DNA from: Obrimoposthia wandeli
Taxonomy: Eukaryota
NCBI GenBank assembly: GCA_977020255.1
Contig: CDROCS010000084.1
Coordinates: forward strand, 1 to 64,000
Direction of reading: 5' to 3'
Length of the DNA: 64,000 bases
Shown: in pieces, positions 1 through 62,108 of the stretch
Numbering within the stretch: position 1 is the first letter of the stretch
Layout of the letters: each line of letters opens with the position of its first letter
Position numbers and translations under genes: made by a program
Notes under the pieces: model-generated
What the model saw: only the letters and a program-made list of their open reading frames with translations
The model's database searches: none
Told to the model about the DNA's origin: nothing

Positions 1-459
1 ATGCTTCAGTTGATGATTGGTTTCATTTTGTTAAAAGCGCTACCTAAATTGAATTCGGTTAGGCTGTGCTTCACCGGTATGGGTGTTACACTATTATTTT
101 TTTTTTCTGTTCTTAAACGTATTTATTTATCAATTGACGAGGAATGCCTCTAACAATCCCCCAAGCATTCACTAACTAGTTACTGGTTTCAAGTGCAGCG
201 ATAGCGGCGCCAAGAGCGCTATTGTAGTAGCGGTTTATCTATCCTTGAAGTCCAGTTCAATTCAATAAATGATTAATAGGTTCGTTATTAAATGTTATTA
301 TTATATATTTAGCATTATTGCTTAAATTATTTTGATAGTGTACTAATTAAAACGAAGTGTCGTTTCCAGAACTTGGTGAGTAAGTTTCTATCACCTCTTG
401 GTGATTGGTAACTAACATAATCGTGAATATAAATTTATAAATAAGGGCCCAGTTTGCTT

Positions 460-1481
460 TCTATAGAATCTAATAAAGAGTTAGTTAATCTTAATACGCT
501 TGCTTTTCAGCCATCGCAGAGCAGTTTTACTGTCATTAAAAATGAAACACAGTTACTTCAAGCTTTACAACATGCGAAAGAGAAAGGATTTAAGTTATCA
601 AGTACTTTCAGGGAGTAATCTACTTATTGAGTGAAAAAGTCCCCGGGGTTAACCTTGCATATGCAATGAATGATATAATTGAACAGACCACTCAAGGAAG
701 TGTTTCTATAAGAGTTGCTGGCGGGAGAAAGGGTAATAAGCTTGTCAGAATATAGCGTTTCTAAAGGTTGGCAGGGCCTAGAAAACTTAGCGCTTATCGG
801 TTTGGTCGGTGCATCCCCCACGGTACAAAATATCGAGATTGCATATGGCACTGAACTAAAAAGATGTATTAATCAAAGTTCGCGCATATGATACGCAATT
901 AGCTACCTTTGTTGATCTTACAAATAACCAGTGCAAATTCGCATACCGAGATAGCATTTTTTAAACGCAGTAAAGCTAGGTACAATAGTGTTAAATGGAT
1001 TTTAAATAGCAAAATCGTTAATATCGATATTAAGTATCAAGCATTGAAGGAACATCTAACCACTTTGAATTTAAAGAACATAAGCAAAAGATGTATTTGA
1101 CGGTGTATGCGAGATTAAGATCTTTAAAACTGCCTGATCTAAATTAGTCGCTAATGCCGGAAGCTTCTTTAAAAACCCATGTGTCGATCAGCAGCATTTC
1201 GAGCAACTTAAGAAAAAGAGTATCACACTATTATTGGTTTTAAAGTTTCTGATAATACAATGAAGGTCGCGGCTGCTTGGATGATTGATAGCTGTGGCTG
1301 GAAAGGGTACGCCAAGCAAGGGGTAGGAGTATATTCAAAACAGGCGTTAGTGTTGATTCATAGCGGCGGGGCAAACATCAATCAGCTTTTAGCTTTAGCA
1401 ACTGACATAAAACAATCTGTACATCGAAAATTTCAGGTAATTCTTGAGATCGAGCCTCAAACATTTCCGCCCCAAAGTTAA
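460..1481 (+). pseudogene. murB: UDP-N-acetylenolpyruvoylglucosamine reductase, multiply frameshifted (likely sequencing error); start approximate
   Basis: Fragments read NLNTLAF, GSNLLI, GLENLALIG-LVGASP-VQNI-AYG, NAGSFFKNP, KVAAAWMIDSCGWKG, KQALVL, LEIEP across shifting frames. Confidence 0.85.
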
Positions 1482-1731: not shown

Positions 1732-1877
1732 CATTATGTCCGGTTAAAAAATGTAAGCCCTCTAACTCATTGATTTGTGATTTTCTATCATGGATAAGTA
1801 GATATTTTTTAGCTAAGGAGTATCTTCCGTTAACGTAAAATCAATGAGTTAGAGAGCAACAAAAATTAAACCGGACA
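1732..1877 (+). repeat. MITE-like family A copy 1; right TIR interrupted by IS110 (TIR resumes at 3298-3306)
   Basis: TGTCCGGTTAA...TTAAACCGGACA ends; perfect inner 17-bp IR CTCTAACTCATTGATTT (1760-1776)/AAATCAATGAGTTAGAG (1838-1854); four more copies in window. Confidence 0.85.
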
Positions 1878-1902
1878 TATATGGACACCCCATAATAGTC
1901 AA
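1876..1902 (-). promoter_or_regulatory. Outward -35 (TTGACT) that completes a sigma70 promoter with -10 TATGCT only at the IS circle junction
   Basis: Minus strand TTGACT at 1902-1897, 17-bp spacer, then TATG; joining to left end CTGAG gives TATGCT. Confidence 0.7.
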
Positions 1903-2200
1903 TTAAAAATGTCGTGTTTATCGTGCCGTCACACCACTATTAATACGCTGTTCTGTCGTGCAGTTTAATTGGTCATTGATAAATAGACGGTACTTTCACA
2001 TATATGCGGCTTCTTCGTGAACACTTTACTGTTCGAGCCATGATGACATTTAAGACGCGCCGACTGCCTTGGCACTAGCTTGGCTTCGAAAGCCGTTGTC
2101 CGGACACAGGTTCCAACCGGCGCTTAACCGTTTTACTCATCAGTGCCAATAGCACCGTCACAGGATTACTCCTTTTTAAAAATAGAAAATGCGTTACATC
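1892..2200 (-). ncRNA. Putative bridge/seekRNA region of the IS1111-type element
   Basis: ~310-bp non-coding end downstream of tnp; contains CATATATG (1999-2006, identical to IS end+core 1876-1883) and TGTCCGGACA (2097-2106, matching target CCGGACA); exact RNA boundaries unknown. Confidence 0.7.
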
Positions 2201-3217
2201 TTAGTAATTTGGTTGATAGTTATTGCCCCTCGCTAACACTGACCAAAGTATTCTTGCGAGCTTATTCGCTAGCGCGACAATGACGGTTTTAGGGGACTTA
2301 TGAGCGATCAAATTCTTAATCCAACAGGATAGTTTATCATCTTTATTATCAACCCAGTTGATCACCGTTCTTGCGCCATGAATGAGTAATGTTCGCAGCC
2401 GCTTGTTACCGTGTTTACTTATTTTTCCCATGTAACACTTTTCGCCGCTAGCATAATGCTTGGGTGTCAGGCCTAACCAAGCAGCAAACTGCCTACCTTT
2501 TTTAAACTGTTGCCCCGTATTAATGGCAGCGATTGTTTCGGCCGCAATGATCGGGCCAATCCCCGGTATTTGCTGTATTCGTTTGTAATCTTTGTCTAGT
2601 TTAAGGAGTTCATGAGATTGAGTTGTTGTTTTTTGGATGCGAGAGTCAAGCTTTATTAGTTCTAGGTACATTTCTTGGAAGAAGGTGCGGGCAGCCAAAG
2701 TGAGCGGTTGCTCTGCATCCTCTATGATACGAGGCAATTGCTTATAAAGTGTATTAGCCCCTGTCGCACAAACGATATGATATTCGGCGAGCAGGCCACG
2801 TACCTGGTTAATAACAGCAGTACGATGCTTCATCAGGCGTTCCCGAATACGCTGTAAACACTGTATATCTTGGTTTTTTAAAGATTTCACTGGCACAAAG
2901 TGGATGTTTGGCCGTTGACTCGCTTCGGCGATAGCGAGGGCATCATTACTGTCGTTTTTATTCCCCTGTACAAAGGGCTTAACTTTTATTGGAGGAATCA
3001 ATTTCACAGTATGACCAAGTTGTTGAATAGCTCTACCCCACGGATGTGAGGAGTAGCAAGCTTCCATAGCGACGATGGTTGGTTCAAATTGGCGAAGCTT
3101 ATGCAGCAAATCCTTCCTGACTACTTTAACGTTAGTGATAACCTTATTATCTGGACTTAAAGCGCATAACTGAAAAACATTCTTTGCTAAATCTATACTG
3201 ATTACGCTAGTCTTCAT
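2201..3217 (-). CDS. IS110 family transposase/bridge recombinase (DEDD RuvC-like + Tnp domain), 338 aa, intact
   Basis: IDLAKNVFQ, AMEAC, KNDSNDA catalytic motifs; IPGIGPI, FAAWLGLTP, SGEK serine motif, ANKLARI. Confidence 0.96.
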   Translation of the reverse strand: MKTSVISIDLAKNVFQLCALSPDNKVITNVKVVRKDLLHKLRQFEPTIVAMEACYSSHPWGRAIQQLGHTVKLIPPIKVKPFVQGNKNDSNDALAIAEASQRPNIHFVPVKSLKNQDIQCLQRIRERLMKHRTAVINQVRGLLAEYHIVCATGANTLYKQLPRIIEDAEQPLTLAARTFFQEMYLELIKLDSRIQKTTTQSHELLKLDKDYKRIQQIPGIGPIIAAETIAAINTGQQFKKGRQFAAWLGLTPKHYASGEKCYMGKISKHGNKRLRTLLIHGARTVINWVDNKDDKLSCWIKNLIAHKSPKTVIVALANKLARILWSVLARGNNYQPNY

Positions 3218-3463
3218 GTGTGGATGCCCCTGCTGATTGAGTTGTTAACGCTCCCAATATGGCACACTTTGATGCCGAGCGGGGGTGTCCATCTCAGCAC
3301 TAATGACTCGAAAGAGAAGTGTTAAGCACAATGTTGTGAATGCTAGCGACTATGCGTTTATCTTCGTAGAACTTGAGTTGAAATAGAATACTCATATTTC
3401 AAGGCGCTTATACTAATAATAGAGCGCGTCAACAACTGTAGATACGCTCTTTTTTATAGATCT

Positions 3464-8665: not shown

Positions 8666-9133
8666 AAATCTAGATCGTAGACGAAGTCATTGTGGGGTAT
8701 TCAGCTTAAGTTATATCAGAAATTCACACCATGTTTTTCAGATTACATTTTGTTTGGATTCCAAAGTATCACCATAAAGTATTTGTTGAGCCATTTAGAG
8801 CTGATCTTAAAGCAATTATCCAAAAAATTGGATATGACTACGATATAGAAATTATAGAGCTTGAAATACCAGTTGATCATATTCATATGGTAGTACGAAC
8901 AGATCCAAAAATAGCACCATCTCATGTGATGCAAGTCATTAAAAGTATTTCGGCTCGGGAGGATTACACCCGCTATAAAAAGTGGGAGGGAAGCTGTGGA
9001 CTCAAAGTTATTTCCGTGGAAACAGTGGGAATGCTAGCGAAGAAGTAATTATGTTCAAGACCAACTATTGGTCATGAACAAAAGTGAATTAAATAGTAAG
9101 GCTCAAAAACTCGGTCGCTTGCGGCCGAGATTT
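8666..9133 (+). mobile_element. tnpA: IS200-like (Y1 TnpA-only) copy A, left hairpin lost, internal deletions
   Basis: HFVWIPKY, HIHM (HUH) motifs; right hairpin CTCGGTCGCTTGCGGCCGAG. Confidence 0.9.
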
Positions 9134-22541: not shown

Positions 22542-24443
22542 TTGGGCATTAGTATGAACGAGCAATCACTTTTTCATGAAGGCGAATTGACAGTACAAGA
22601 ACGCGCTAATGAAGCAGATATTGCTCAACGCAACGGTATTGTCGTTAGTAAGCATATTATTAAAGGCGCTCTCCCTTTCATTGCTCAGCAATATATGACA
22701 GTGATCACCAGTACAGATAAAAAAAACCAAATCTGGACGTCTGTATTATTTGGTAAGCCAGGTTTTATAAATGCCCCAGATGATCAACATATATTGATTA
22801 ATCCTCAACAAATTATTAATCAATCTGCCGATCCGTTATGGCTTAATATAACGCGAAATACACAAGTGGGCCTATTGATCATAGAACTGAGTACTCGTCG
22901 TCGTCTTCGAGTAAATGGTAATATTAGTTTGTTAAGTAATGGTCAATATGAAGTCGTTGTCGCTCAGGCATACCCTAATTGTCCTAAGTACATTCAACGA
23001 AGACAGCCAGAATTAACAGATAAAGCGCTGACTTATAAAACACCTAAGCCTCAGTTCGGTGATAGTTTAACGACAACGCAAGTTGAGTTAATTTCAAATT
23101 CAGACAGTTTTTTTGTCGGCTCTGGAGTGGATAATAACCACAGTGATGCTTCATATCGAGGCGGTGAAACTGGCTTCGTTAGCGTTATAAATAAGTATGA
23201 ATTGCAGATCCCTGATTATAAGGGCAATAGCATGTTTAATACCTTAGGAAATTTTCAATCAAACCCCAATGCAGGTTTGGTGTTTATCGATTTTGTGCAT
23301 AACAAACTATTACAACTTACCGGTACGGCAAAAATTTTATGGGATCAACCCGATGATATTAATAATACCGGTGGTACTAAACGTTACTGGCGTTTTAATA
23401 TTAAAGGTTGGCAAGAAACACAATTACCATCGGGCTTAAATTGGACGTTTTTTGACTATTCACCGCACAACCCTAAAATTGAGAGCTCAGCAGAGTTGAT
23501 TTTACAGATATCTGCTATTGAAAATATATCTGAAAAAATTAAATTATTGAGATTAACAGCAGGCAATGGAGGCATTTTACCTGCTTTTAAAGCGGGTTCA
23601 CATTTGCCTATTGAAGTTAAATTATCAGAAAAAACAACCGTACAACGCCATTATTCAATTACCTCATCTAACCATGATAATCGCTTTTATGAGATTGCTG
23701 TACAGCAAGAAAAGCAAGGGCGTGGTGGCTCAAACTATATTCATGAGCAATTGAAAACGGGTGATTTAATAACCGCTGTGCATCCTGTTAATAAATTTTC
23801 ACTGACTTCTTCTGGCAATCATCATATTTTAATTGCGGGTGGAATTGGCATAACCCCTATTATTTCTATGCTCAAAGAGTTGTCTCAAAGCAATCAATCA
23901 TTTGAATTACATTACAGTGTGAAGAAGGCAAGTGACTTGGCCTTCAAAGCGGAAATCATCAGGCTAGCGGGAGAACATGCACATTTTTATATTACGCAGG
24001 GGCTCGATGCAAACAGGCTGGACTTAAAGTCTCTTTTCATGGAGGGCAATAAATCTAGTCATATTTATATTTGTGGTCCACTAAGCATGATCGAAGCTGT
24101 TAAAGAGACAGCGAATATTCATAACTGGGACCCTAGCCACATTCATTTTGAAAGCTTTGGTCGTTCCCTACAGAAAACTGATAAAGCAGTTGAAGTAAGG
24201 CTGAAAAAGTCAGGAAAAATTATTGTTATAGACCCCAAAGAAACATTATTAGACGGGCTCTTAAAAGCAAACGTCAAAGTGCCATTTGAGTGTAAAAGGG
24301 GAGAATGTGGTATGTGCGCAACTGAATATGTTGAAGGAATACCTGAACATAGAGACGTATATTTAACTAAAGAAGAAAAAACGCATAGTTTGTGTGTGTG
24401 CGTTTCACGCACAAAAAGTCACTCAATTAGCTTAAATCTTTAA
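22542..24443 (+). CDS. Pyridoxamine-5'-phosphate oxidase-like FMN-binding domains fused to ferredoxin reductase (FAD/NAD) and 2Fe-2S ferredoxin
   Basis: FHEGELTVQ, DASYRGG, PDYKGNSMFNTLGN; RHYSIT, GRGGS, AGGIGITP, YICGP; CKRGECGMC...CVCVSR. Confidence 0.9.
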   Translation: MGISMNEQSLFHEGELTVQERANEADIAQRNGIVVSKHIIKGALPFIAQQYMTVITSTDKKNQIWTSVLFGKPGFINAPDDQHILINPQQIINQSADPLWLNITRNTQVGLLIIELSTRRRLRVNGNISLLSNGQYEVVVAQAYPNCPKYIQRRQPELTDKALTYKTPKPQFGDSLTTTQVELISNSDSFFVGSGVDNNHSDASYRGGETGFVSVINKYELQIPDYKGNSMFNTLGNFQSNPNAGLVFIDFVHNKLLQLTGTAKILWDQPDDINNTGGTKRYWRFNIKGWQETQLPSGLNWTFFDYSPHNPKIESSAELILQISAIENISEKIKLLRLTAGNGGILPAFKAGSHLPIEVKLSEKTTVQRHYSITSSNHDNRFYEIAVQQEKQGRGGSNYIHEQLKTGDLITAVHPVNKFSLTSSGNHHILIAGGIGITPIISMLKELSQSNQSFELHYSVKKASDLAFKAEIIRLAGEHAHFYITQGLDANRLDLKSLFMEGNKSSHIYICGPLSMIEAVKETANIHNWDPSHIHFESFGRSLQKTDKAVEVRLKKSGKIIVIDPKETLLDGLLKANVKVPFECKRGECGMCATEYVEGIPEHRDVYLTKEEKTHSLCVCVSRTKSHSISLNL

Positions 24444-24449
24444 TAATAT

Positions 24450-24746
24450 TCATTGCTGTACGGTTTAATTTTTGTTGCTCTATCACTCATTGATTTGACG
24501 CTAACGACAAGTATTGTTTTCTTGAAGAATGCCCCTTTAGCCATTAGAGGCTGTCGTAAAAGGTAGCGAGCGATAATAAGACAAGGCAAAAATCGGAGAA
24601 ATAGCGGAGTTTACTGGTGTAAATGAGCATATTGAGCCGGTTTTTAACGCCGTATTATTGAGCGCAGCCGTTTTACAACAGCCTCATTACGGGGAAGCAC
24701 AAATCAATGAGTAAGAGGGCTTACATTTTTAACTGGACAGCAATGA
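24450..24746 (-). repeat. MITE-like family A copy 2 (reverse), with nested family B element
   Basis: TCATTGCTGTACGGTTTAA...TTAACTGGACAGCAATGA ends; AAATCAATGAG inner motifs. Confidence 0.85.
24547..24685. mobile_element. MITE family B nested in family A copy 2
   Basis: TIR GAGGCTGTCGTAAAA/TTTTACAACAGCCTC flanked by ATTA direct repeat (24543-24546, 24686-24689). Confidence 0.8.
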
Positions 24747-25636: not shown

Positions 25637-25758
25637 CATTGCTGTCCGGTTAAAAAGTGTAAGCTCTTGACCCATTGTTTTGTGGTTTACTAGCCAAATA
25701 ACACTTGTGGTTAACGTAAAATCAATGAGTTAAAGAGCAACAAAAATTAAACCGGACA
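25637..25758 (+). repeat. MITE-like family A copy 3 (internal deletion), followed by TATATG
   Basis: CATTGCTGTCCGGTTAAAAAG...AATTAAACCGGACA. Confidence 0.88.
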
Positions 25759-25818
25759 TATATGATTATTAATAAAACAGCGGGCGCTATTTTGGTTTTA
25801 AAGGGGGTTGATAGTGGC

Positions 25819-35994: not shown

Positions 35995-38788
35995 ATGGTT
36001 AGATTATTTTATAGTCAATTGGCTAAAAAAATGACAGTTTTTGTTATTTTAATTAGCACTTTCTTTGCTTTATTTAGTGCTGCCTTTCAGGTTTATTTTG
36101 AATATAAAAAGGAAGTAGGTATTGTTTATTTAGAGCTAGAGCAGATTGAAAAAACACATTTAGCTAACATAACATCGCAAGTTTGGTTACTTGAGAATGA
36201 TGGACTTTTGGTCGTTGTTCAAGGTTTGTTAGATCTTCCCAATATTAAATATATTGCTATACATTCAGAAAAAAACATAATATTGGAAAGAGGAAAAGAT
36301 GGTTCAGATAATATTATTGTTAAAGATTTTCCGTTAATTCATATACATAATGGTGAATCAAAGATAATCGGTAAAGTGGTGATTAAGGCAACATTAGATA
36401 ATATTTATCAAAATGTTATAGATAGAGCTTTACTAATAATTCTAATAAATACTATCAAAACATTCATCGTTTCTTTTTTGATCTTATTAGTTTTTTATCG
36501 TTTTGTATCACGACATTTAAATGACATAGCCAATTTTGTCCAACAAATAGATATTAATTCTTTTGAAGGTAAATTTTCATATGACCGCAAAGAAAACTCA
36601 CCAAAGTCACAGGATGAGTTAGATATTTTAAATACCACAATTTTCAAAATACTGAATAAATTAGGCGTAACAACTAAAGAACTCATTATTAGAGAAGAAG
36701 AATTAAAAGAAAAGATTAGCACTATTGTTGATGCTTTAGAAAAATTGAAAAAAAGCGAACAAAAATTAAAACTAGCTGCCAGTGTATTTACTCACGCTCG
36801 AGAAGGAATCGCCATCACTGATACTACCGGCACTATCATTGATGTAAATGATACCTTTACAACCACAACTGGCTATAGCCGCGATGAGGTTATAGGAAAA
36901 AACCCCCGTATGTTTCAATCTGGACGGCAAACACCTGAGTTCTATGCCAATATGTGGCAATGCCTACTGAAAGAAGGTTGTTGGTACGGAGAGCTTTGGA
37001 ACAAGCGCAAAAATGGCGAAGTGTATGTTGAAATGAAAACCATTAGTGCAGTACATGACGAACAAGGAGCCACTACCCATTATGTTGCCTTAGGTAACGA
37101 CATCACACAAATAAAAGAACATCAAGAGCAATTAGAGCGAATTGCCCATTATGACTTACTGACAAACCTACCCAATCGAGTATTGCTAGCAGATCGAATA
37201 TCTCAAGCCATGTTGCAGTGTAGCCGTCACGGGCAATCACTTGCTGTTGTATTTCTTGATTTAGACGGCTTTAAAGCCGTTAATGATGCCTATGGACATG
37301 ATATGGGTGATGAATTGTTGGTTGCACTATCAACTCGTATGAAAGAAGCTTTACGTGAGGGTGATAGTTTAGCCCGGATTGGCGGGGATGAATTTGTTGC
37401 CGTTTTAACCGCATGACTTTGTGGGTATTCAACGAAATTCACACCATGTTTTCCAGATTAATGTATCATTTTTGTTTGGATTCCAAAGTATCGCCATAAA
37501 GTATTTGTTCAGCCATTTAGAGCTGATCTTAAAGCAATTATCCGGATATGACTACGATAGAAATTATAGAGCGATACCAGTTGATATATTCATATGGTAG
37601 TACGAACAGATCGCACCATCTCACAAGTCATCGGCTCGGGGAGTTTTTTCGATTACACCCCGCTATAAAAAGAAGTATTTCTGTCAATTATTTCGTGGAA
37701 ACAATTGGAAATATTGTGATTAAATAGTAAGCAATCGGTCAGCTGACTTAACAAATATTGATGACTGTGAACCGATTTTAGAGCGATTACTATTAGCCGT
37801 CTCAAACTCTATCACTGTCAATGATATTGTATTAAATATCTCAGCAAGTATCGGTGTCACTCTCTACCCTGAAGACAACGTGGATGTAGATCTACTCATG
37901 CGCCATGCCGACCAAGCCATGTATGTTGCTAAAGGATCAGGTAAGAATCGTTATCACTTGTTTGATACGGCTCAAGATGACGCGGTTAAATTACACCGCG
38001 AAAGCCTAGAAGCGATTCAGAGCGCATTGGATAACGATCAATTTGTACTCTATTATCAGCCTAAGGTTAATATGAAAACGGGTACAGTGACGGGTGTTGA
38101 GGCGCTTATTCGCTGGCAGCATCCAGAGCGAGGGCTATTAAGTCCAATTGAATTTTTGCCGGTAATTGAAAATAATCCTATGATGATTGAGATGGGTGAG
38201 TGGATTATTGATACGGCACTGGCACAAATTAGCCAATGGCAAACGATGGAGCTAGACATACCCGTAAGTACCAGTGTAAATATAGCTGCAGTACAATTAC
38301 AGCAGCCTAACTTCTCACAGAGGCTAGCAGTACTGTTAGCCGCCCATCCCGATGTCGAACCACACCATTTAGAACTAGAAGTACTCGAAACAAGTGCCTT
38401 AGATGACGTATACCAGGTCTCAACAATCATGAAAGACTGTATGGCGCTGGGCGTAAGCTTTGCCCTAGATGATTTTGGCACAGGCTACTCATCTCTCACT
38501 TACCTGAGACGGTTACCAGCAAGTTTAATTAAGATAGACCAAACCTTTGTACGTGACATGCTGAATGACCCGGATGATTTAGCCATTGTTGAGGGCGTGA
38601 TAGCTTTAGCTAAATCTTTTAAACGGGATGTGATTGCTGAAGGGGTTGAAACGATTGAACATAGCACTGCGCTGTTAGAACTAGGTTGTGAATTAGCACA
38701 AGGTTACGGCATTGCCAGACCGATGCCGGGGGACAGTATTCCAGCGTGGATAAGTGAGTGGAAGCCAGATGTGAGTTGGAAGGTCTGA
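35995..38788 (+). pseudogene. TM/HAMP-PAS-GGDEF-EAL gene split by IS200-like insert (ORFs 35995-37416 and 37880-38788)
   Basis: Removing 37408-37741 restores GGDEFVAVL-ADLTNIDDCEPILERLL in frame, giving an 819-aa ORF. Confidence 0.9.
37408..37741 (+). mobile_element. IS200-like copy B, deletion-riddled, inside GGDEF domain
   Basis: TTTA|ACCGCA left junction; tnpA sequence blocks colinear with 61241-61791. Confidence 0.88.
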
Positions 38789-49018: not shown

Positions 49019-49248
49019 AATGGGCAGCAGCCAAAAAAAATCAAGGTAAACGTTCATTCCTTTGAATTAATGACTCAGACTATCTAAGCAAGCGAAAAAC
49101 AGAAGAACGAACTGATAGAAAGTGCAGCCCTTATCAGTGATAACTGAGGCCATATGCCGAATAAACATCAAGAAGATAGAAAAATATTGATTTGTGTAGA
49201 GTTCTATCTAAATTAACCTTCGAAGCAGGTCAGTTTTTTACTTATAAA

Positions 49249-49797
49249 AAATCTCGGCCGCAAGCGACCGAGTTTTTAGAACAGCCCGAGCTGCTTACTA
49301 TTTAATTCACTTTTGTTCATGACCAATAGTTGGTCTTGAACATATTTTCGTATTACTTCTTCGCTAGCATTTCCAATTGTTTCCACGAAATAACTTTGAG
49401 TCCACAGCTTCCCTCCCCAGAAGTACTTCTTTTTTATAGCGGGGTGTAATCGAAAAAACTCCCGAGCCGAAATACTTTTAATGACTTGCATCACATGAGA
49501 TGGTGCTATTTTTGGATCTGTTCGTACTACCATGTGAATATGATCAATAGGAATTTCAAGCTCTGTAATTTCTATATCATAGTCACATCCAATTTTTGAA
49601 TAATTGCTTTAAGATCAGCTCTAAATGGCTCAACAAATACTTTATGGCGATACTTTGGAATCCAAACAAAATGATACATTAATCTGAAAACATGGTGTGA
49701 ATTTCGATATAACTCCATAAGCTGAATACCCCACAATGACTTCGTCATTGTACGCTATCCAGCTCGGGGGCAAGCCCCGAGATTTACGCTTTGCGGT
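49249..49797 (-). mobile_element. tnpA: IS200-like copy C, near full length, both hairpins; single 1-nt lesion in tnpA (49718-49276)
   Basis: Left hairpin CTCGGGG(G)CTTGCCCCCGAG, right hairpin; HFVWIPKY, HIHM, LWTQSYFVETIG. Confidence 0.95.
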
Positions 49798-50518: not shown

Positions 50519-50664
50519 CATTGCTGTCCGGTTAAAAAGTGTAAGCCCTCTAACTCGTTGATTTGTGGTTTTCTAGCATAGTAAATTGGATTCTTTCAGC
50601 CGAATAACACTTGTCGTTAACGTAAAATCAACGAGTTAAAGAACAACAAAAATTAAACCGGACA
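50519..50664 (+). repeat. MITE-like family A copy 4, followed by TATATATTCTCAG
   Basis: CATTGCTGTCCGGTTAAAAAG...AATTAAACCGGACA; inner IR TAACTCGTTGATTT/AAATCAACGAGTTA. Confidence 0.9.
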
Positions 50665-50820
50665 TATATATTCTCAGATATAATTATTCCAATCTCTATT
50701 AACGTTTGATCGAATTGTATAAGTGCGCATAAATAAATTCTAGCGCTGTTAGTGATTAGAGTGTTATCAGTAAATGGGCAGCTTTAAAAAGGATGTTGCT
50801 ACTGGCGTAAATAATAAGGC

Positions 50821-52206: not shown

Positions 52207-52633
52207 ACCGCATAGCGTAAATCTCGGGGGCTTGCCCCGAGCTGGAAATGACGAAGTCATAAATATATCGAAATGTTTTCAGATTAATGTATCATTTTGT
52301 TTGGATTCCAAAATATCGATCCATTTATTCTTAAAGCAACCAAAAAATTGCTACGATTAGAACTTGAAATGTTGATCATATTCATATGTAGTACGAACAG
52401 ATCCAAAAATAGCACCATCTCATGTGAGCAAGTCATTAAAAAGTATTTCGGCTAGGAGTTTTCGATTACACCCCGCTATAAAAAAGAAGTACTTCTGGGG
52501 AGGGAAGCTGTGGACTCAAAGTTATATCGTGGAAACAATTGGAAATGCTAGCGAAGAAGTAATACGAAAATATGTTCAAGACCAACTTATGAACAAAAGT
52601 GAATTAAATAGTAAGCAGCTCGGGCTGTTCTAA
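52207..52633 (+). mobile_element. IS200-like copy D, deletion-riddled, right hairpin absent
   Basis: TTTA|ACCGCATAGCG left junction and left hairpin; tnpA blocks. Confidence 0.9.
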
Positions 52634-60974: not shown

Positions 60975-61122
60975 ATTGCTGTCCGGTTAAAAAATGTAAG
61001 CTCTTTACTCATTGATTTGTGGCTTCCTAGCATAGTAAATTGGATTGTTTTCAGCCAAATAACACTTATGGTTAACAAAAAATCAATGAGTTATAGAACA
61101 ACAATTAAACCGGACACTAATA
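60975..61122 (+). repeat. MITE-like family A copy 5 with empty IS110 target
   Basis: ATTGCTGTCCGGTTAAAAA...AATTAAACCGGACACTAAT; right end equals the reconstructed pre-insertion site of copy 1. Confidence 0.9.
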
Positions 61123-61240: not shown

Positions 61241-61791
61241 ACCGCATAGCGTAAATCTCGGGGGCTTGCCCCCGAGCTGGATAGCGTACAATGACGAAGT
61301 CATTGTGGGGTATTCAGCTTATGGAGTTATATCGAAATTCACACCATGTTTTCAGATTAATGTATCATTTTGTTTGGATTCCAAAGTATCGCCATAAAGT
61401 ATTTGTTGAGCCATTTAGAGCTGATCTTAAAGCAATTATCCAAAAAATTGGATATGACTACGATATAGAAATTATAGAGCTTGAAATACCAGTTGATCAT
61501 ATTCATATGGTAGTACGAAGAGATCCAAAAATAACACCATCTCATGTGATGCAAGTCATTAAAAGTATTTCGGCTCGGGAGTTTTTCCGATTACACTCCG
61601 CTATAAAAAAAAGTACTTCTGGGGAGGGAAGCTGTGGACTCAAAGTTATTTCGTGGAAACAATTGGAAATGCTAGCGAAGAAGTAATACGAAAATATGTT
61701 CAAGACCAACTATTGGTCATGAACAAAAGTGAATTAAATAGTAAGCAGCTCGGGCTGTTCTAAAAACTCGGTCGCTTGCGGCCGAGATTTT
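61241..61791 (+). mobile_element. tnpA: IS200-like copy E, near full length (tnpA 61321-61763 with 1-nt lesion)
   Basis: TTTA|ACCGCATAGCGTAAAT-CTCGGGGGCTTGCCCCCGAG left end; right hairpin CTCGGTCGCTTGCGGCCGAGATTT. Confidence 0.95.
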
Positions 61792-61796
61792 ATCTA

Positions 61797-62088
61797 TGAT
61801 TCAGCTTATGGAGTTATATCGAAATTCACACCATGTTTTCAGATTAATGTATCATTTTGTTTGGATTCCAAAGTATCACCATAAAGTATTTGTTGAGCCA
61901 TTTAGAGCGATCTAAAGCAAGGATATGACTACGATATAGAAATTATAGAGCTTGAAATACCAATCATATTCATATGGTAGTACGAACAATCCATAGCACC
62001 ATCTCATGATGCAAGTCATTAAAAGTAAAAAAAGTTATTTCGTGGAAACAATTCCAAGACCAACTATTGGTCATGAACAAAAGTGAAT
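61797..62088 (+). mobile_element. IS200-like copy F, tandem partial, deletion-riddled
   Basis: Restarts at ATTCAGCTTATGGAG; tnpA blocks; no hairpins. Confidence 0.85.
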
Positions 62089-62108
62089 TACATTTTGAAT
62101 AAAGTGGG

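What the first reader, a model, noticed from the sequence alone, without database searches (positions are those of the whole stretch)
1892..2200. Candidate bridge/seekRNA with donor- and target-matching segments
Seen: the ~310-bp segment downstream of tnp contains CATATATG (1999-2006), identical to right end+core (1876-1883). It also contains TGTCCGGACAC (2097-2107), which matches the target on both strands (CCGGACA; GTGTCCGG). On the transposase strand CACTGATGA matches the other target flank CACTAATGA at 8/9. Established: IS1111-group elements encode their guide RNA downstream of tnp. Inference: these are programmable guide loops. I could not assign a convincing guide for the left donor end (CTCAGCA).
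Basis: partly seen in the sequence, partly recalled or inferred. Interest (0 to 1): 0.85.

Follow-up and report, generated by a model that had tools for sequence, protein, structure and literature searches.

The report
Guide-RNA gene of an IS1111 element
The non-coding stretch behind this mobile element's recombinase gene is very probably its guide ("bridge" or "seek") RNA, which spells both the end of a small repeat the element inserts into and the element's own ends; it is an ordinary new example of a class described in 2024, and RNA expression was not shown.

Summary
The observed motifs are all in the sequence. The main reading holds: this is the guide-RNA gene of an IS1111-type element. 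Two guide assignments needed correction.

- **Element:** 1,422 bp, window 1878-3299, recombinase gene on the minus strand. It sits 7 nt inside the terminal repeat of a highly repeated ~146-bp MITE. Contigs of a DNA run show empty sites, CCGGACA|CTAATGA.
- **RNA structure:** a covariance model built from the non-coding regions (NCRs) of 11 relatives hits the window once (1974-2164, minus strand). It also hits 115 NCRs downstream of related recombinase genes, including IS4321. 94% of cells pair against 66% in shuffles. 20 of 21 pairs show compensatory changes. G·U outnumbers A·C 46 to 7, which points to an RNA on the recombinase strand.
- **Guides:** four loop segments change together with insertion-site flanks or element ends across 17-64 distinct guide sets (0/5000 permutations each).
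  - right target guide CCGGACA, 2097-2103 (reader correct)
  - left target guide CUAGUG, 2073-2078 (reader missed it)
  - left donor guide AUAUAUG, 1999-2005 (reader correct)
- **Open:** no expression evidence was found.

The scan has already reported a similar IS1111 element on other DNA of this genome (s1-229442). Verdict: new member of a known kind.

The parts
1878..3299 (-). IS1111-type insertion sequence, 1,422 bp. The 2-bp core CA/TG makes the boundary ambiguous by 2 nt.
   Evidence: A second insertion of the same element (L081, 96% nt identity) loses similarity exactly here. Twenty contigs of run X1 continue after 1877 with CTAATGA, which is the empty-site form. An empty MITE copy reads CCGGACA|CTAATAC at 61108-61122.
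2201..3217 (-). Recombinase (transposase) gene, 338 aa, intact.
   Evidence: Pfam PF01548 (6.9e1 bits, E 4.8e-19) and PF02371 (E 2.1e-25). NCBIfam NF033542 'IS110 family RNA-guided transposase', 317.7 bits against a cutoff of 140. The GLxPxxxxSG motif is present and S257 and G258 are invariant.
3282..3292 (-). Left subterminal inverted repeat, ATGGACACCCC on the tnp strand.
   Evidence: Perfect 11-nt inverted repeat with 1881-1891. The ATGG...CCAT repeat is conserved across the family.
3293..3299 (-). 7-nt left-end extension TG-CTGAG: the core TG plus the start of the right donor half.
   Evidence: A 7-bp left extension is described for the IS1111 family (PMC11187229).
1881..1891 (-). Right subterminal inverted repeat, GGGGTGTCCAT on the tnp strand.
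1878..1880 (-). 3-nt right-end extension ATA (left donor half).
1974..2164 (-). Conserved structured core of the guide RNA gene (covariance-model match).
   Evidence: This is the only hit of model R1 in the window.
2097..2103 (-). Right target guide (RTG) CCGGACA. It would pair with the top strand of TG-TCCGG at the MITE end.
   Evidence: Coordinates. Across the family the guide matches the reverse complement of the right flank at 6.45 of 8 positions against 3.53 in permutations, 0/5000.
2073..2078 (-). Left target guide (LTG) CUAG-UG. It reads in the same sense as the left flank plus core, so it would pair with the bottom strand.
   Evidence: It matches L081's flank CTAG-TG at 6 of 6 and the window's flank TTAG-TG at 5 of 6. 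Across the family 6.05 of 8 against 3.46, 0/5000.
2041..2049 (-). Candidate right donor guide (RDG) AUGUCAUCA, antisense to the left end TG-CTGAGAT at 7 of 9 positions.
   Evidence: Across the family 5.52 of 7 against 4.80, 0/5000. Examples: CCCAUU with AATGGG, ACUAU with ATAGT, UCCAUUGAG with CTCAATGGA.
1999..2005 (-). Left donor guide (LDG) AUAUAUG, same sense as the right-end extension plus core, (CC)AT-ATA-TG.
   Evidence: It covaries with the right end: ATATG, ATACG, AGATT, ACATG and GTATG. 4.71 of 5 against 3.75, 0/5000. IS4321 serves as a control: GGAU-AGA-UU against CCAT-AGA-TT.
2114..2124 (-). 5' strand of the long stem closing the target-binding loop. It pairs with 2057-2066.
   Evidence: All 8 pairs show compensatory changes and 95.9% of cells are paired.
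2057..2066 (-). 3' strand of that stem.
2082..2094 (-). Hairpin GGCUUUCGAAGCC between the two target guides.
   Evidence: All 4 pairs show compensatory changes and 97.1% of cells are paired.
2008..2039 (-). Stem-loop GGCUC...GAAGCC between the two donor guides.
   Evidence: 4 of 5 pairs show compensatory changes and 93.8% of cells are paired. GGCU/AGCC becomes GGCG/CGCC in L004 and L005.
2137..2142 (-). It is not a target guide.
   Evidence: It is kept in relatives with different flanks. It is complementary to UCAUCA at 2041-2046, but a permutation test gives no covariation support: 5.21 against 5.18.
1897..1902 (-). -35-like TTGACT near the right end. In a circular form it would give TTGACT-17 nt-TATGCT across the junction.
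   Evidence: Read from the sequence. TTGAC sits at a conserved distance in relatives. A junction promoter is described for ISEc11 (PMC11187229). This is an inference and was not tested.
1737..1877 (+). MITE copy that holds the target. Its last 7 nt, CTAATGA, lie at 3300-3306 on the far side of the element.
   Evidence: Four full copies in the window. Summed contig depth in run X1 is about 3000 against about 8 for the element.

Best explanation
Window 1974-2164 (minus strand) is the guide-RNA gene, a seekRNA or bridge RNA, of an intact IS1111-type insertion sequence at 1878-3299.

**Proposed mechanism**
1. The RNA is transcribed in the recombinase sense, most likely as the 3' part of the tnp transcript. 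This step is inferred.
2. It folds into two modules.
   - A long stem (2114-2124 with 2057-2066) closes a target-binding loop. Its 5' side carries CCGGACA, which would pair with the top strand of TG-TCCGG. Its 3' side carries CUAG-UG, which would pair with the bottom strand of (C/T)TAG-TG.
   - A second module flanks the stem-loop at 2008-2039. It carries AUGUCAUCA, antisense to the element's left end TG-CTGAGAT. It also carries AUAUAUG, in the same sense as the right end ATA-TG.
3. The RNA would thus hold the joined ends of the excised circle next to the terminal repeat of a MITE.
4. The DEDD recombinase would then exchange strands at the shared TG/CA core. That inserts the element between CCGGACA and CTAATGA without a duplication.

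**Shown here:** the structure, guide-flank and guide-end covariation, the exact insertion site, and a second independent insertion.

**Inferred:** transcription, processing, protein binding and catalysis, by analogy with ISEc11, ISKpn4, ISPa11 and IS621.
For: - **Recombinase family.** Pfam PF01548 plus PF02371. NCBIfam 'IS110 family RNA-guided transposase', 317.7 bits.
- **IS1111 anatomy.** 11-nt subterminal inverted repeats, a 7-nt left and 3-nt right extension, and a long NCR downstream of tnp. This is the layout described in PMC11187229 and PMC11208160.
- **Structure.** RNAalifold finds 21 pairs, 12 of them compensatory among 11 sequences. On 65 distinct sequences 94.0% of cells pair against 66.4% in shuffles and 24-49% in slid controls, and 20 of 21 pairs are compensatory. 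G·U 46 against A·C 7.
- **Model hits.** Model R1 hits only this place in the window and 115 NCRs downstream of tnp in other loci. It also hits IS4321 (38.3 bits), whose guides match its right end and the flank of that copy.
- **Guide covariation, each 0/5000 permutations**. LTG 6.05 of 8 against 3.46. RTG 6.45 of 8 against 3.53. LDG 4.71 of 5 against 3.75. RDG 5.52 of 7 against 4.80.
- **Order of guides.** The top-strand-pairing guide lies 5' of the bottom-strand-pairing guide, as reported for IS1111 seekRNAs. The strand assignments match the IS621 model.
- **Boundaries.** L081 is a second insertion next to a different MITE copy. Empty-site contigs are seen in run X1.
Against: - No RNA evidence. 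The only RNA run found held next to none of the sequence and nothing could be laid on it.
- No internal promoter or terminator stands out.
- The single-sequence fold is unremarkable (z = 0.09).
- The left target guide matches this copy's own flank at only 5 contiguous nt. There is a C opposite the T of TTAG.
- The right donor guide matches the element's own left end at only 7 of 9 positions. It is more complementary to the internal UGAUGA box than to the left end.
- Related sequences share ancestry, so the permutation counts overstate the number of independent events.
Confidence: 0.88

Rival explanations
1. The conserved region acts as DNA, for example as recombinase-binding sites or a single-stranded DNA fold near the right end, and not as an RNA guide.
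For: No transcript was observed. The region lies inside the element's right end, where protein-binding sites are expected.
Against: Helices tolerate G·U (46 cells) far more than A·C (7 cells), which is a strand asymmetry expected of an RNA on the tnp strand. Loop segments track flanking host DNA that the element does not carry, which fits guide pairing. In experimentally studied relatives the NCR works in trans as RNA (PMC11187229).
Confidence: 0.03
2. The guide RNA gene is a relic. The element is no longer mobile in this genome, and the match to the MITE only records a past insertion.
For: Contig depth of the element in run X1 (about 7-10) is similar to the unique flank (8.2), which suggests one or few copies. 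The left target guide mismatches the consensus MITE end at one position. The surrounding genes look broken.
Against: The recombinase ORF is full length and keeps all family-invariant residues. All helices and guides are intact. A 96%-identical copy sits next to a different MITE copy in a metagenome contig, L081, so the element moved recently.
Confidence: 0.08
3. The matches between the non-coding region and the flanks or ends arose by chance.
For: Each motif alone is short. CATATATG occurs as often as expected in the window.
Against: None of 5000 permutations reaches the cognate match for any of the four guide segments. The structural covariation is strong.
Confidence: 0.01

Closest known systems
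seekRNAs of the IS1111 family members ISEc11, ISKpn4, ISPa11 and ISPst6 (Siddiquee et al. 2024, PMC11187229)
   Same: The NCR lies downstream of tnp. The element has subterminal inverted repeats with a 7-nt left extension. The two target matches overlap at the core, with the top-strand match 5' of the bottom-strand match. The target lies in a repeated, potentially folded sequence, as ISPa11 targets REP elements. The target module (about 68 nt between stem ends) and the whole two-module region (about 150 nt) are close in size to the reported 82-96 nt and about 154 nt RNAs.
   Different: The recombinase is distant from the IS1111-family members that could be compared: about 36% identity to IS4321/IS5075 and 42% to the best Enterobacteriaceae plasmid hits. 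ISEc11, ISKpn4 and ISPa11 themselves were not fetched or compared. The target, a MITE terminal repeat (C/T)TAG-TG-TCCGG, is different. No RNA or activity data exist for this element.
IS621 / ISCro4 bridge RNA (Durrant et al. 2024, PMC11208160; PDB 8wt6, 9t56)
   Same: The logic is the same: a target module and a donor module. [quoted passage not shown] Discontiguous right-donor pairing has a precedent in IS621.
   Different: Only the C-terminal domain aligns to the solved proteins (E about 2e-12). The RNA lies in the right end, not the left end. The order of guides within a loop is reversed. The subterminal repeats are long. The core is TG, not CT.
IS4321 / IS5075 (Partridge and Hall 2003)
   Same: Model R1 hits the IS4321 NCR at 38.3 bits, E 6e-7. 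The equivalent loop positions read AAAACGG-AA and AU-AGA-UU. These match the right flank of that copy, TT-CCGTTTT, and the right end CCAT-AGA-TT.
   Different: Recombinase identity is 36%. The target is the terminal repeat of Tn21-family transposons and the core is TT.

Membership tests
IS1111 group of the IS110 family | DEDD recombinase with the PF01548 and PF02371 domains, 330-350 aa, and a GL-P----S(T)G motif | tested here: met
   Both Pfam domains are found. NCBIfam NF033542 scores 317.7 bits. The protein is 338 aa and carries GLTPKHYASG, with S257 and G258 invariant.
IS1111 group of the IS110 family | Subterminal inverted repeats of 7-17 bp with short terminal extensions (7 nt left, 3 nt right) | tested here: met
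   ATGGACACCCC and GGGGTGTCCAT, 11 nt each. The extensions are TGCTGAG and ATA.
IS1111 group of the IS110 family | The longer non-coding region lies downstream of tnp | tested here: met
   323 nt downstream (1878-2200) against 82 nt upstream (3218-3299).
IS1111 group of the IS110 family | Site-specific insertion without target duplication | tested here: met
   Two independent insertions sit at the same position of a MITE terminal repeat. Empty sites read CCGGACA|CTAATGA. Only the 2-nt core is shared.
seekRNA / bridge RNA | Conserved structured RNA element in the long NCR | tested here: met
   94% of cells paired and 20 of 21 pairs compensatory. G·U far exceeds A·C.
seekRNA / bridge RNA | [quoted passage not shown] | tested here: met
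   0/5000 permutations each. In the window they are CCGGACA and CUAG-UG.
seekRNA / bridge RNA | Donor-binding segments complementary to the element's joined ends | tested here: met
   The left donor guide is clear: 4.71 of 5 against 3.75. The right donor guide is weaker: 5.52 of 7 against 4.80, and 7 of 9 in this element.
seekRNA / bridge RNA | The RNA is expressed and bound by the recombinase, and is required for circle formation and insertion | not testable with these tools
   One metatranscriptome (X13) held 7% of the sampled words, and nothing could be laid on the stretch. No run of the source organism is identified as an RNA library.

The most novel reading that the evidence does not exclude
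The conserved 5' box UGAUGAG (2136-2142) has the same sense as the family-consensus left end (TG-ATGAG). It is perfectly complementary to the consensus right donor guide (CUCAUCA). It could be an intramolecular mimic of the donor that masks the right donor guide until the recombinase or the circular donor is present. That would gate the order of assembly or the direction of recombination in IS1111 elements. In this element the guide pairs better with the box (6 bp) than with its own left end (7 of 9, discontiguous).
Probability: 0.12. Interest if true: 0.55.

Novelty: new member of a known kind. Interest (0 to 1): 0.3.

Why it matters
RNA-guided IS110/IS1111 recombinases are being developed as programmable tools for inserting DNA. 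This element adds a natural system whose recombinase, guide RNA, donor ends and 11-nt target are all defined from sequence. It comes from a marine bacterial clade only about 36-47% identical to the IS1111 relatives found on sequenced plasmids.

The family alignment (about 116 NCRs with their flanks) shows which RNA positions are programmable in this branch. It also shows a recurrent mismatch in the right donor guide.

Biologically, the element homes to the terminal repeat of a MITE present in very many copies. That gives it many harmless landing sites, which is the known strategy of relatives that target REP elements.

None of this changes the current picture of the family.

Tried and rejected
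- **Rfam scan of the whole window:** no family hit.
- **Single-sequence fold of 1877-2200:** no better than shuffles, so uninformative.
- **Promoter and terminator scan:** nothing above the shuffle expectation.
- **Genome-contig scan:** neither the source genome nor close relatives were returned. Close relatives came from the metagenome scan and protein look-ups instead.
rejected, because it is conserved across different targets.
- **A helix between the UGAUGA box and UCAUCA:** complementary in this sequence, but permutation gives no covariation support, 5.21 against 5.18. Paired cells reach 77.6% on columns aligned by sequence only.
- **Two candidate outer helices (GACGGU or ACGGU with ACCGU):** they covary in the closest relatives but only 52-55% of cells pair family-wide. 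Left open.
- **First version of the 'flank without core' test:** it was mis-registered (second line). It was redone correctly.
- **RNA-run search:** no usable transcript evidence.

Full report
**What is there.** The window's first 3.3 kb hold one intact 338-aa ORF on the minus strand (2201-3217). It carries the two Pfam domains of IS110-family DEDD recombinases. It scores 317.7 bits against NCBIfam NF033542, 'IS110 family RNA-guided transposase', whose cutoff is 140. In the gene's orientation the element reads as follows:
- left flank ...GAGTCATTAG
- TG-CTGAG, then the repeat ATGGACACCCC
- tnp, then a 323-nt non-coding region (NCR)
- the repeat GGGGTGTCCAT, then ATA
- right flank TG-TCCGGTTTAA...

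This layout has 11-nt subterminal inverted repeats, a 7-nt left and a 3-nt right extension, and a long NCR downstream of the gene. It is the anatomy that defines the IS1111 group (PMC11187229; PMC11208160).

**Boundaries and target.** The right flank is the end of a ~146-bp palindromic MITE.
- The window holds four full MITE copies and one partial copy.
- A metagenome contig, L081, carries the same element (96% nt identity, 98.5% aa identity) next to a different and diverged copy of this MITE. Similarity ends exactly at ...CACTAG|TG on one side and at the outer end of the MITE on the other.
- In contigs of DNA run X1, the MITE has a summed depth of about 3000. The element and its unique flank have about 8.
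- Twenty X1 contigs continue after position 1877 with CTAATGA..., which is the sequence found at 3300-3306 on the far side of the element.
- The window copy at 60975-61117 is also empty and reads CCGGACA|CTAATAC.

So the element is 1878-3299, 1,422 bp. It is inserted without a duplication at a shared CA/TG core, 7 nt inside the MITE's terminal repeat.

**Is the NCR a structured RNA?** The single-sequence fold (z = 0.09) and Rfam say nothing either way. The comparative evidence is strong.
- I collected NCRs from relatives with 50-88% recombinase identity and aligned them.
- RNAalifold finds four helices with 21 pairs, 12 of them compensatory among 11 sequences.
- A covariance model built from that alignment hits the window once, at 1974-2164 on the minus strand.
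- It hits 115 further places, all just downstream of related recombinase genes and on their strand.
- On 65 distinct sequences, 94.0% of cells form standard pairs. Column shuffles give 66.4% and slid controls give 24-49%. Twenty of 21 pairs show changes on both sides.
- G·U pairs number 46 and A·C pairs 7. This asymmetry is expected only if the folded molecule is an RNA, or a single strand, of the recombinase sense.

**Are the loops guides?** I located each relative's subterminal repeats. I then read off the flanks and end extensions at fixed offsets. One representative was kept per distinct guide, giving 64 for the target guides, 60 for the right donor guide and 17 for the left donor guide. 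Flanks or ends were permuted among elements.

| Segment | Compared with | Cognate | Permuted | Permutations reaching cognate |
|---|---|---|---|---|
| 3' side of first loop | left flank + core, same sense | 6.05 of 8 | 3.46 | 0/5000 |
| same, 5 nt before the core only | left flank | 4.44 of 5 | 2.35 | 0/5000 |
| 5' side of first loop | reverse complement of core + right flank | 6.45 of 8 | 3.53 | 0/5000 |
| segment after the second stem-loop | right-end extension + core, same sense | 4.71 of 5 | 3.75 | 0/5000 |
| segment before the second stem-loop | reverse complement of core + left-end extension | 5.52 of 7 | 4.80 | 0/5000 |

For the third segment the guide/end pairs are ATATG/ATATG, ATACG/ATACG, AGATT/AGATT, ACATG/ACATG and GTATG/GTATG. 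For the fourth, examples are CCCAUU with AATGGG, ACUAU with ATAGT and UCCAUUGAG with CTCAATGGA.

These strand assignments are those of the IS621 model. There the left guides pair with the bottom strand, the right guides pair with the top strand, and the core is included in all four pairings (PMC11208160). The order found here, with the top-strand match 5' of the bottom-strand match, is the order reported for IS1111 seekRNAs (PMC11187229).

As a control, the model also hits the NCR of IS4321 (38.3 bits). There the same positions read AAAACGG-AA and AU-AGA-UU. The flank of that copy is TT-CCGTTTT and its right end is CCAT-AGA-TT.

Related elements share ancestry, so the permutation counts are not probabilities of independent events. 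Even so, the many distinct combinations of guide and flank make chance untenable.

**The window's own RNA (coordinates).**
- Right target guide: CCGGACA, 2097-2103.
- Left target guide: CUAG-UG, 2073-2078.
- Right donor guide (candidate): AUGUCAUCA, 2041-2049.
- Left donor guide: AUAUAUG, 1999-2005.
- Helices: 2114-2124 with 2057-2066; 2108-2110 with 2067-2069; hairpin 2082-2094; 2035-2039 with 2008-2013.

The inferred target is (C/T)TAG-TG-TCCGG, or CCGGA-CA-CTA(G/A) on the plus strand. The left target guide matches L081's flank fully. It matches this copy's flank, and the consensus MITE end, with one mismatch.

The right donor guide matches the element's own left end at 7 of 9 positions. One of the two mismatches, a C:U, is shared by the whole close clade. 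Discontiguous pairing at this guide has a precedent in IS621. This remains the least secure of the four assignments.

- The motifs are all present.
- 'Candidate bridge/seekRNA' is right.
- CCGGACA and CAUAUAUG are correctly identified as target and donor guides.
- The 'both strands' remark about TGTCCGGACAC only reflects a palindrome.
- CACTGATGA (2137-2145) is not the guide for the other flank. It is unchanged in L161, L164 and L166, whose left flanks are TATGCC, AGTGCC and TATGGG.

That box is complementary to UCAUCA inside the candidate right donor guide. Family-wide permutation gives no support for that pairing, 5.21 against 5.18. Its role is therefore open, and the novel-case field gives one reading of it.

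**What is not shown.** There is no evidence of transcription. The only RNA run found held 7% of the sampled words, and nothing from it could be laid on the stretch. No internal promoter or terminator stands out. By analogy with ISEc11, the RNA would come from the tnp transcript. That transcript would be driven in the circular form by a junction promoter, here TTGACT-17 nt-TATGCT, with TTGAC conserved in relatives. This is an inference.

**Verdict.** This is a well-supported new member of a known kind, the guide-RNA gene of an IS1111-type RNA-guided recombinase that homes to a MITE terminal repeat. The scan has already followed up a similar IS1111 element on another piece of this genome (s1-229442). 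That report is not independent evidence and I did not test it. Interest is modest.

Noticed in passing
window 1737-1877, 25638-25758, 50520-50664, 60975-61116; partial inverted copy about 24439-24549: A ~146-bp palindromic MITE with terminal repeats TCATTRS-TGTCCGGTT. In DNA run X1 its summed contig depth is about 3000 against about 8 for unique sequence, which suggests very many copies in the source genome.
   Followed up: partly
window 25750-25770 and 50656-50690: Two MITE copies without the element end in CCGGACA-TATAT(G/A) in place of the usual CCGGACA-CTAATGA. That is the element's right-end extension. The 50.6-kb copy continues TATAT-AT-TCTCAG-AT-ATAAT. This resembles right end, then left end (ATCTCAG-CA), then CTAAT, with everything between the subterminal repeats missing. 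It may be a footprint of a lost element copy.
   Followed up: partly
window 454-1481, plus strand: Several short ORFs in different frames (454-618, 715-891, 1260-1481) read like consecutive pieces of one housekeeping enzyme. From memory it is MurB-like. That suggests a gene broken by frameshifts, or indel errors in the assembly. The region looks rich in pseudogenes.
   Followed up: no
window 8692-9100, 37414-37541, 49243-49778, 52459-52587, 61261-62099: A second, unrelated repeat family with 93-99% identical direct and inverted copies of 60-216 nt.
   Followed up: no
L045:2574-2769 and L045:2941-3136 (Coxiellaceae MAG): One related recombinase gene is followed by two identical copies of the guide-RNA module, each followed by a right end, with different sequence beyond each. 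This is a tandem duplication of the RNA-plus-right-end part.
   Followed up: no
window 2165-2200 and relatives: A conserved AAAGGAG-like motif lies between the tnp stop codon and the structured core in relatives with 55-88% recombinase identity. Its function is unknown.
   Followed up: no
window 1905-1973 (minus strand): The stretch between the structured core and the right repeat carries a motif, GUGUGACGGCACGAUAAACACGAC, that is conserved down to 68% recombinase identity. It echoes the 5' CUGUGACGGUGC of the RNA. It was not explained.
   Followed up: no
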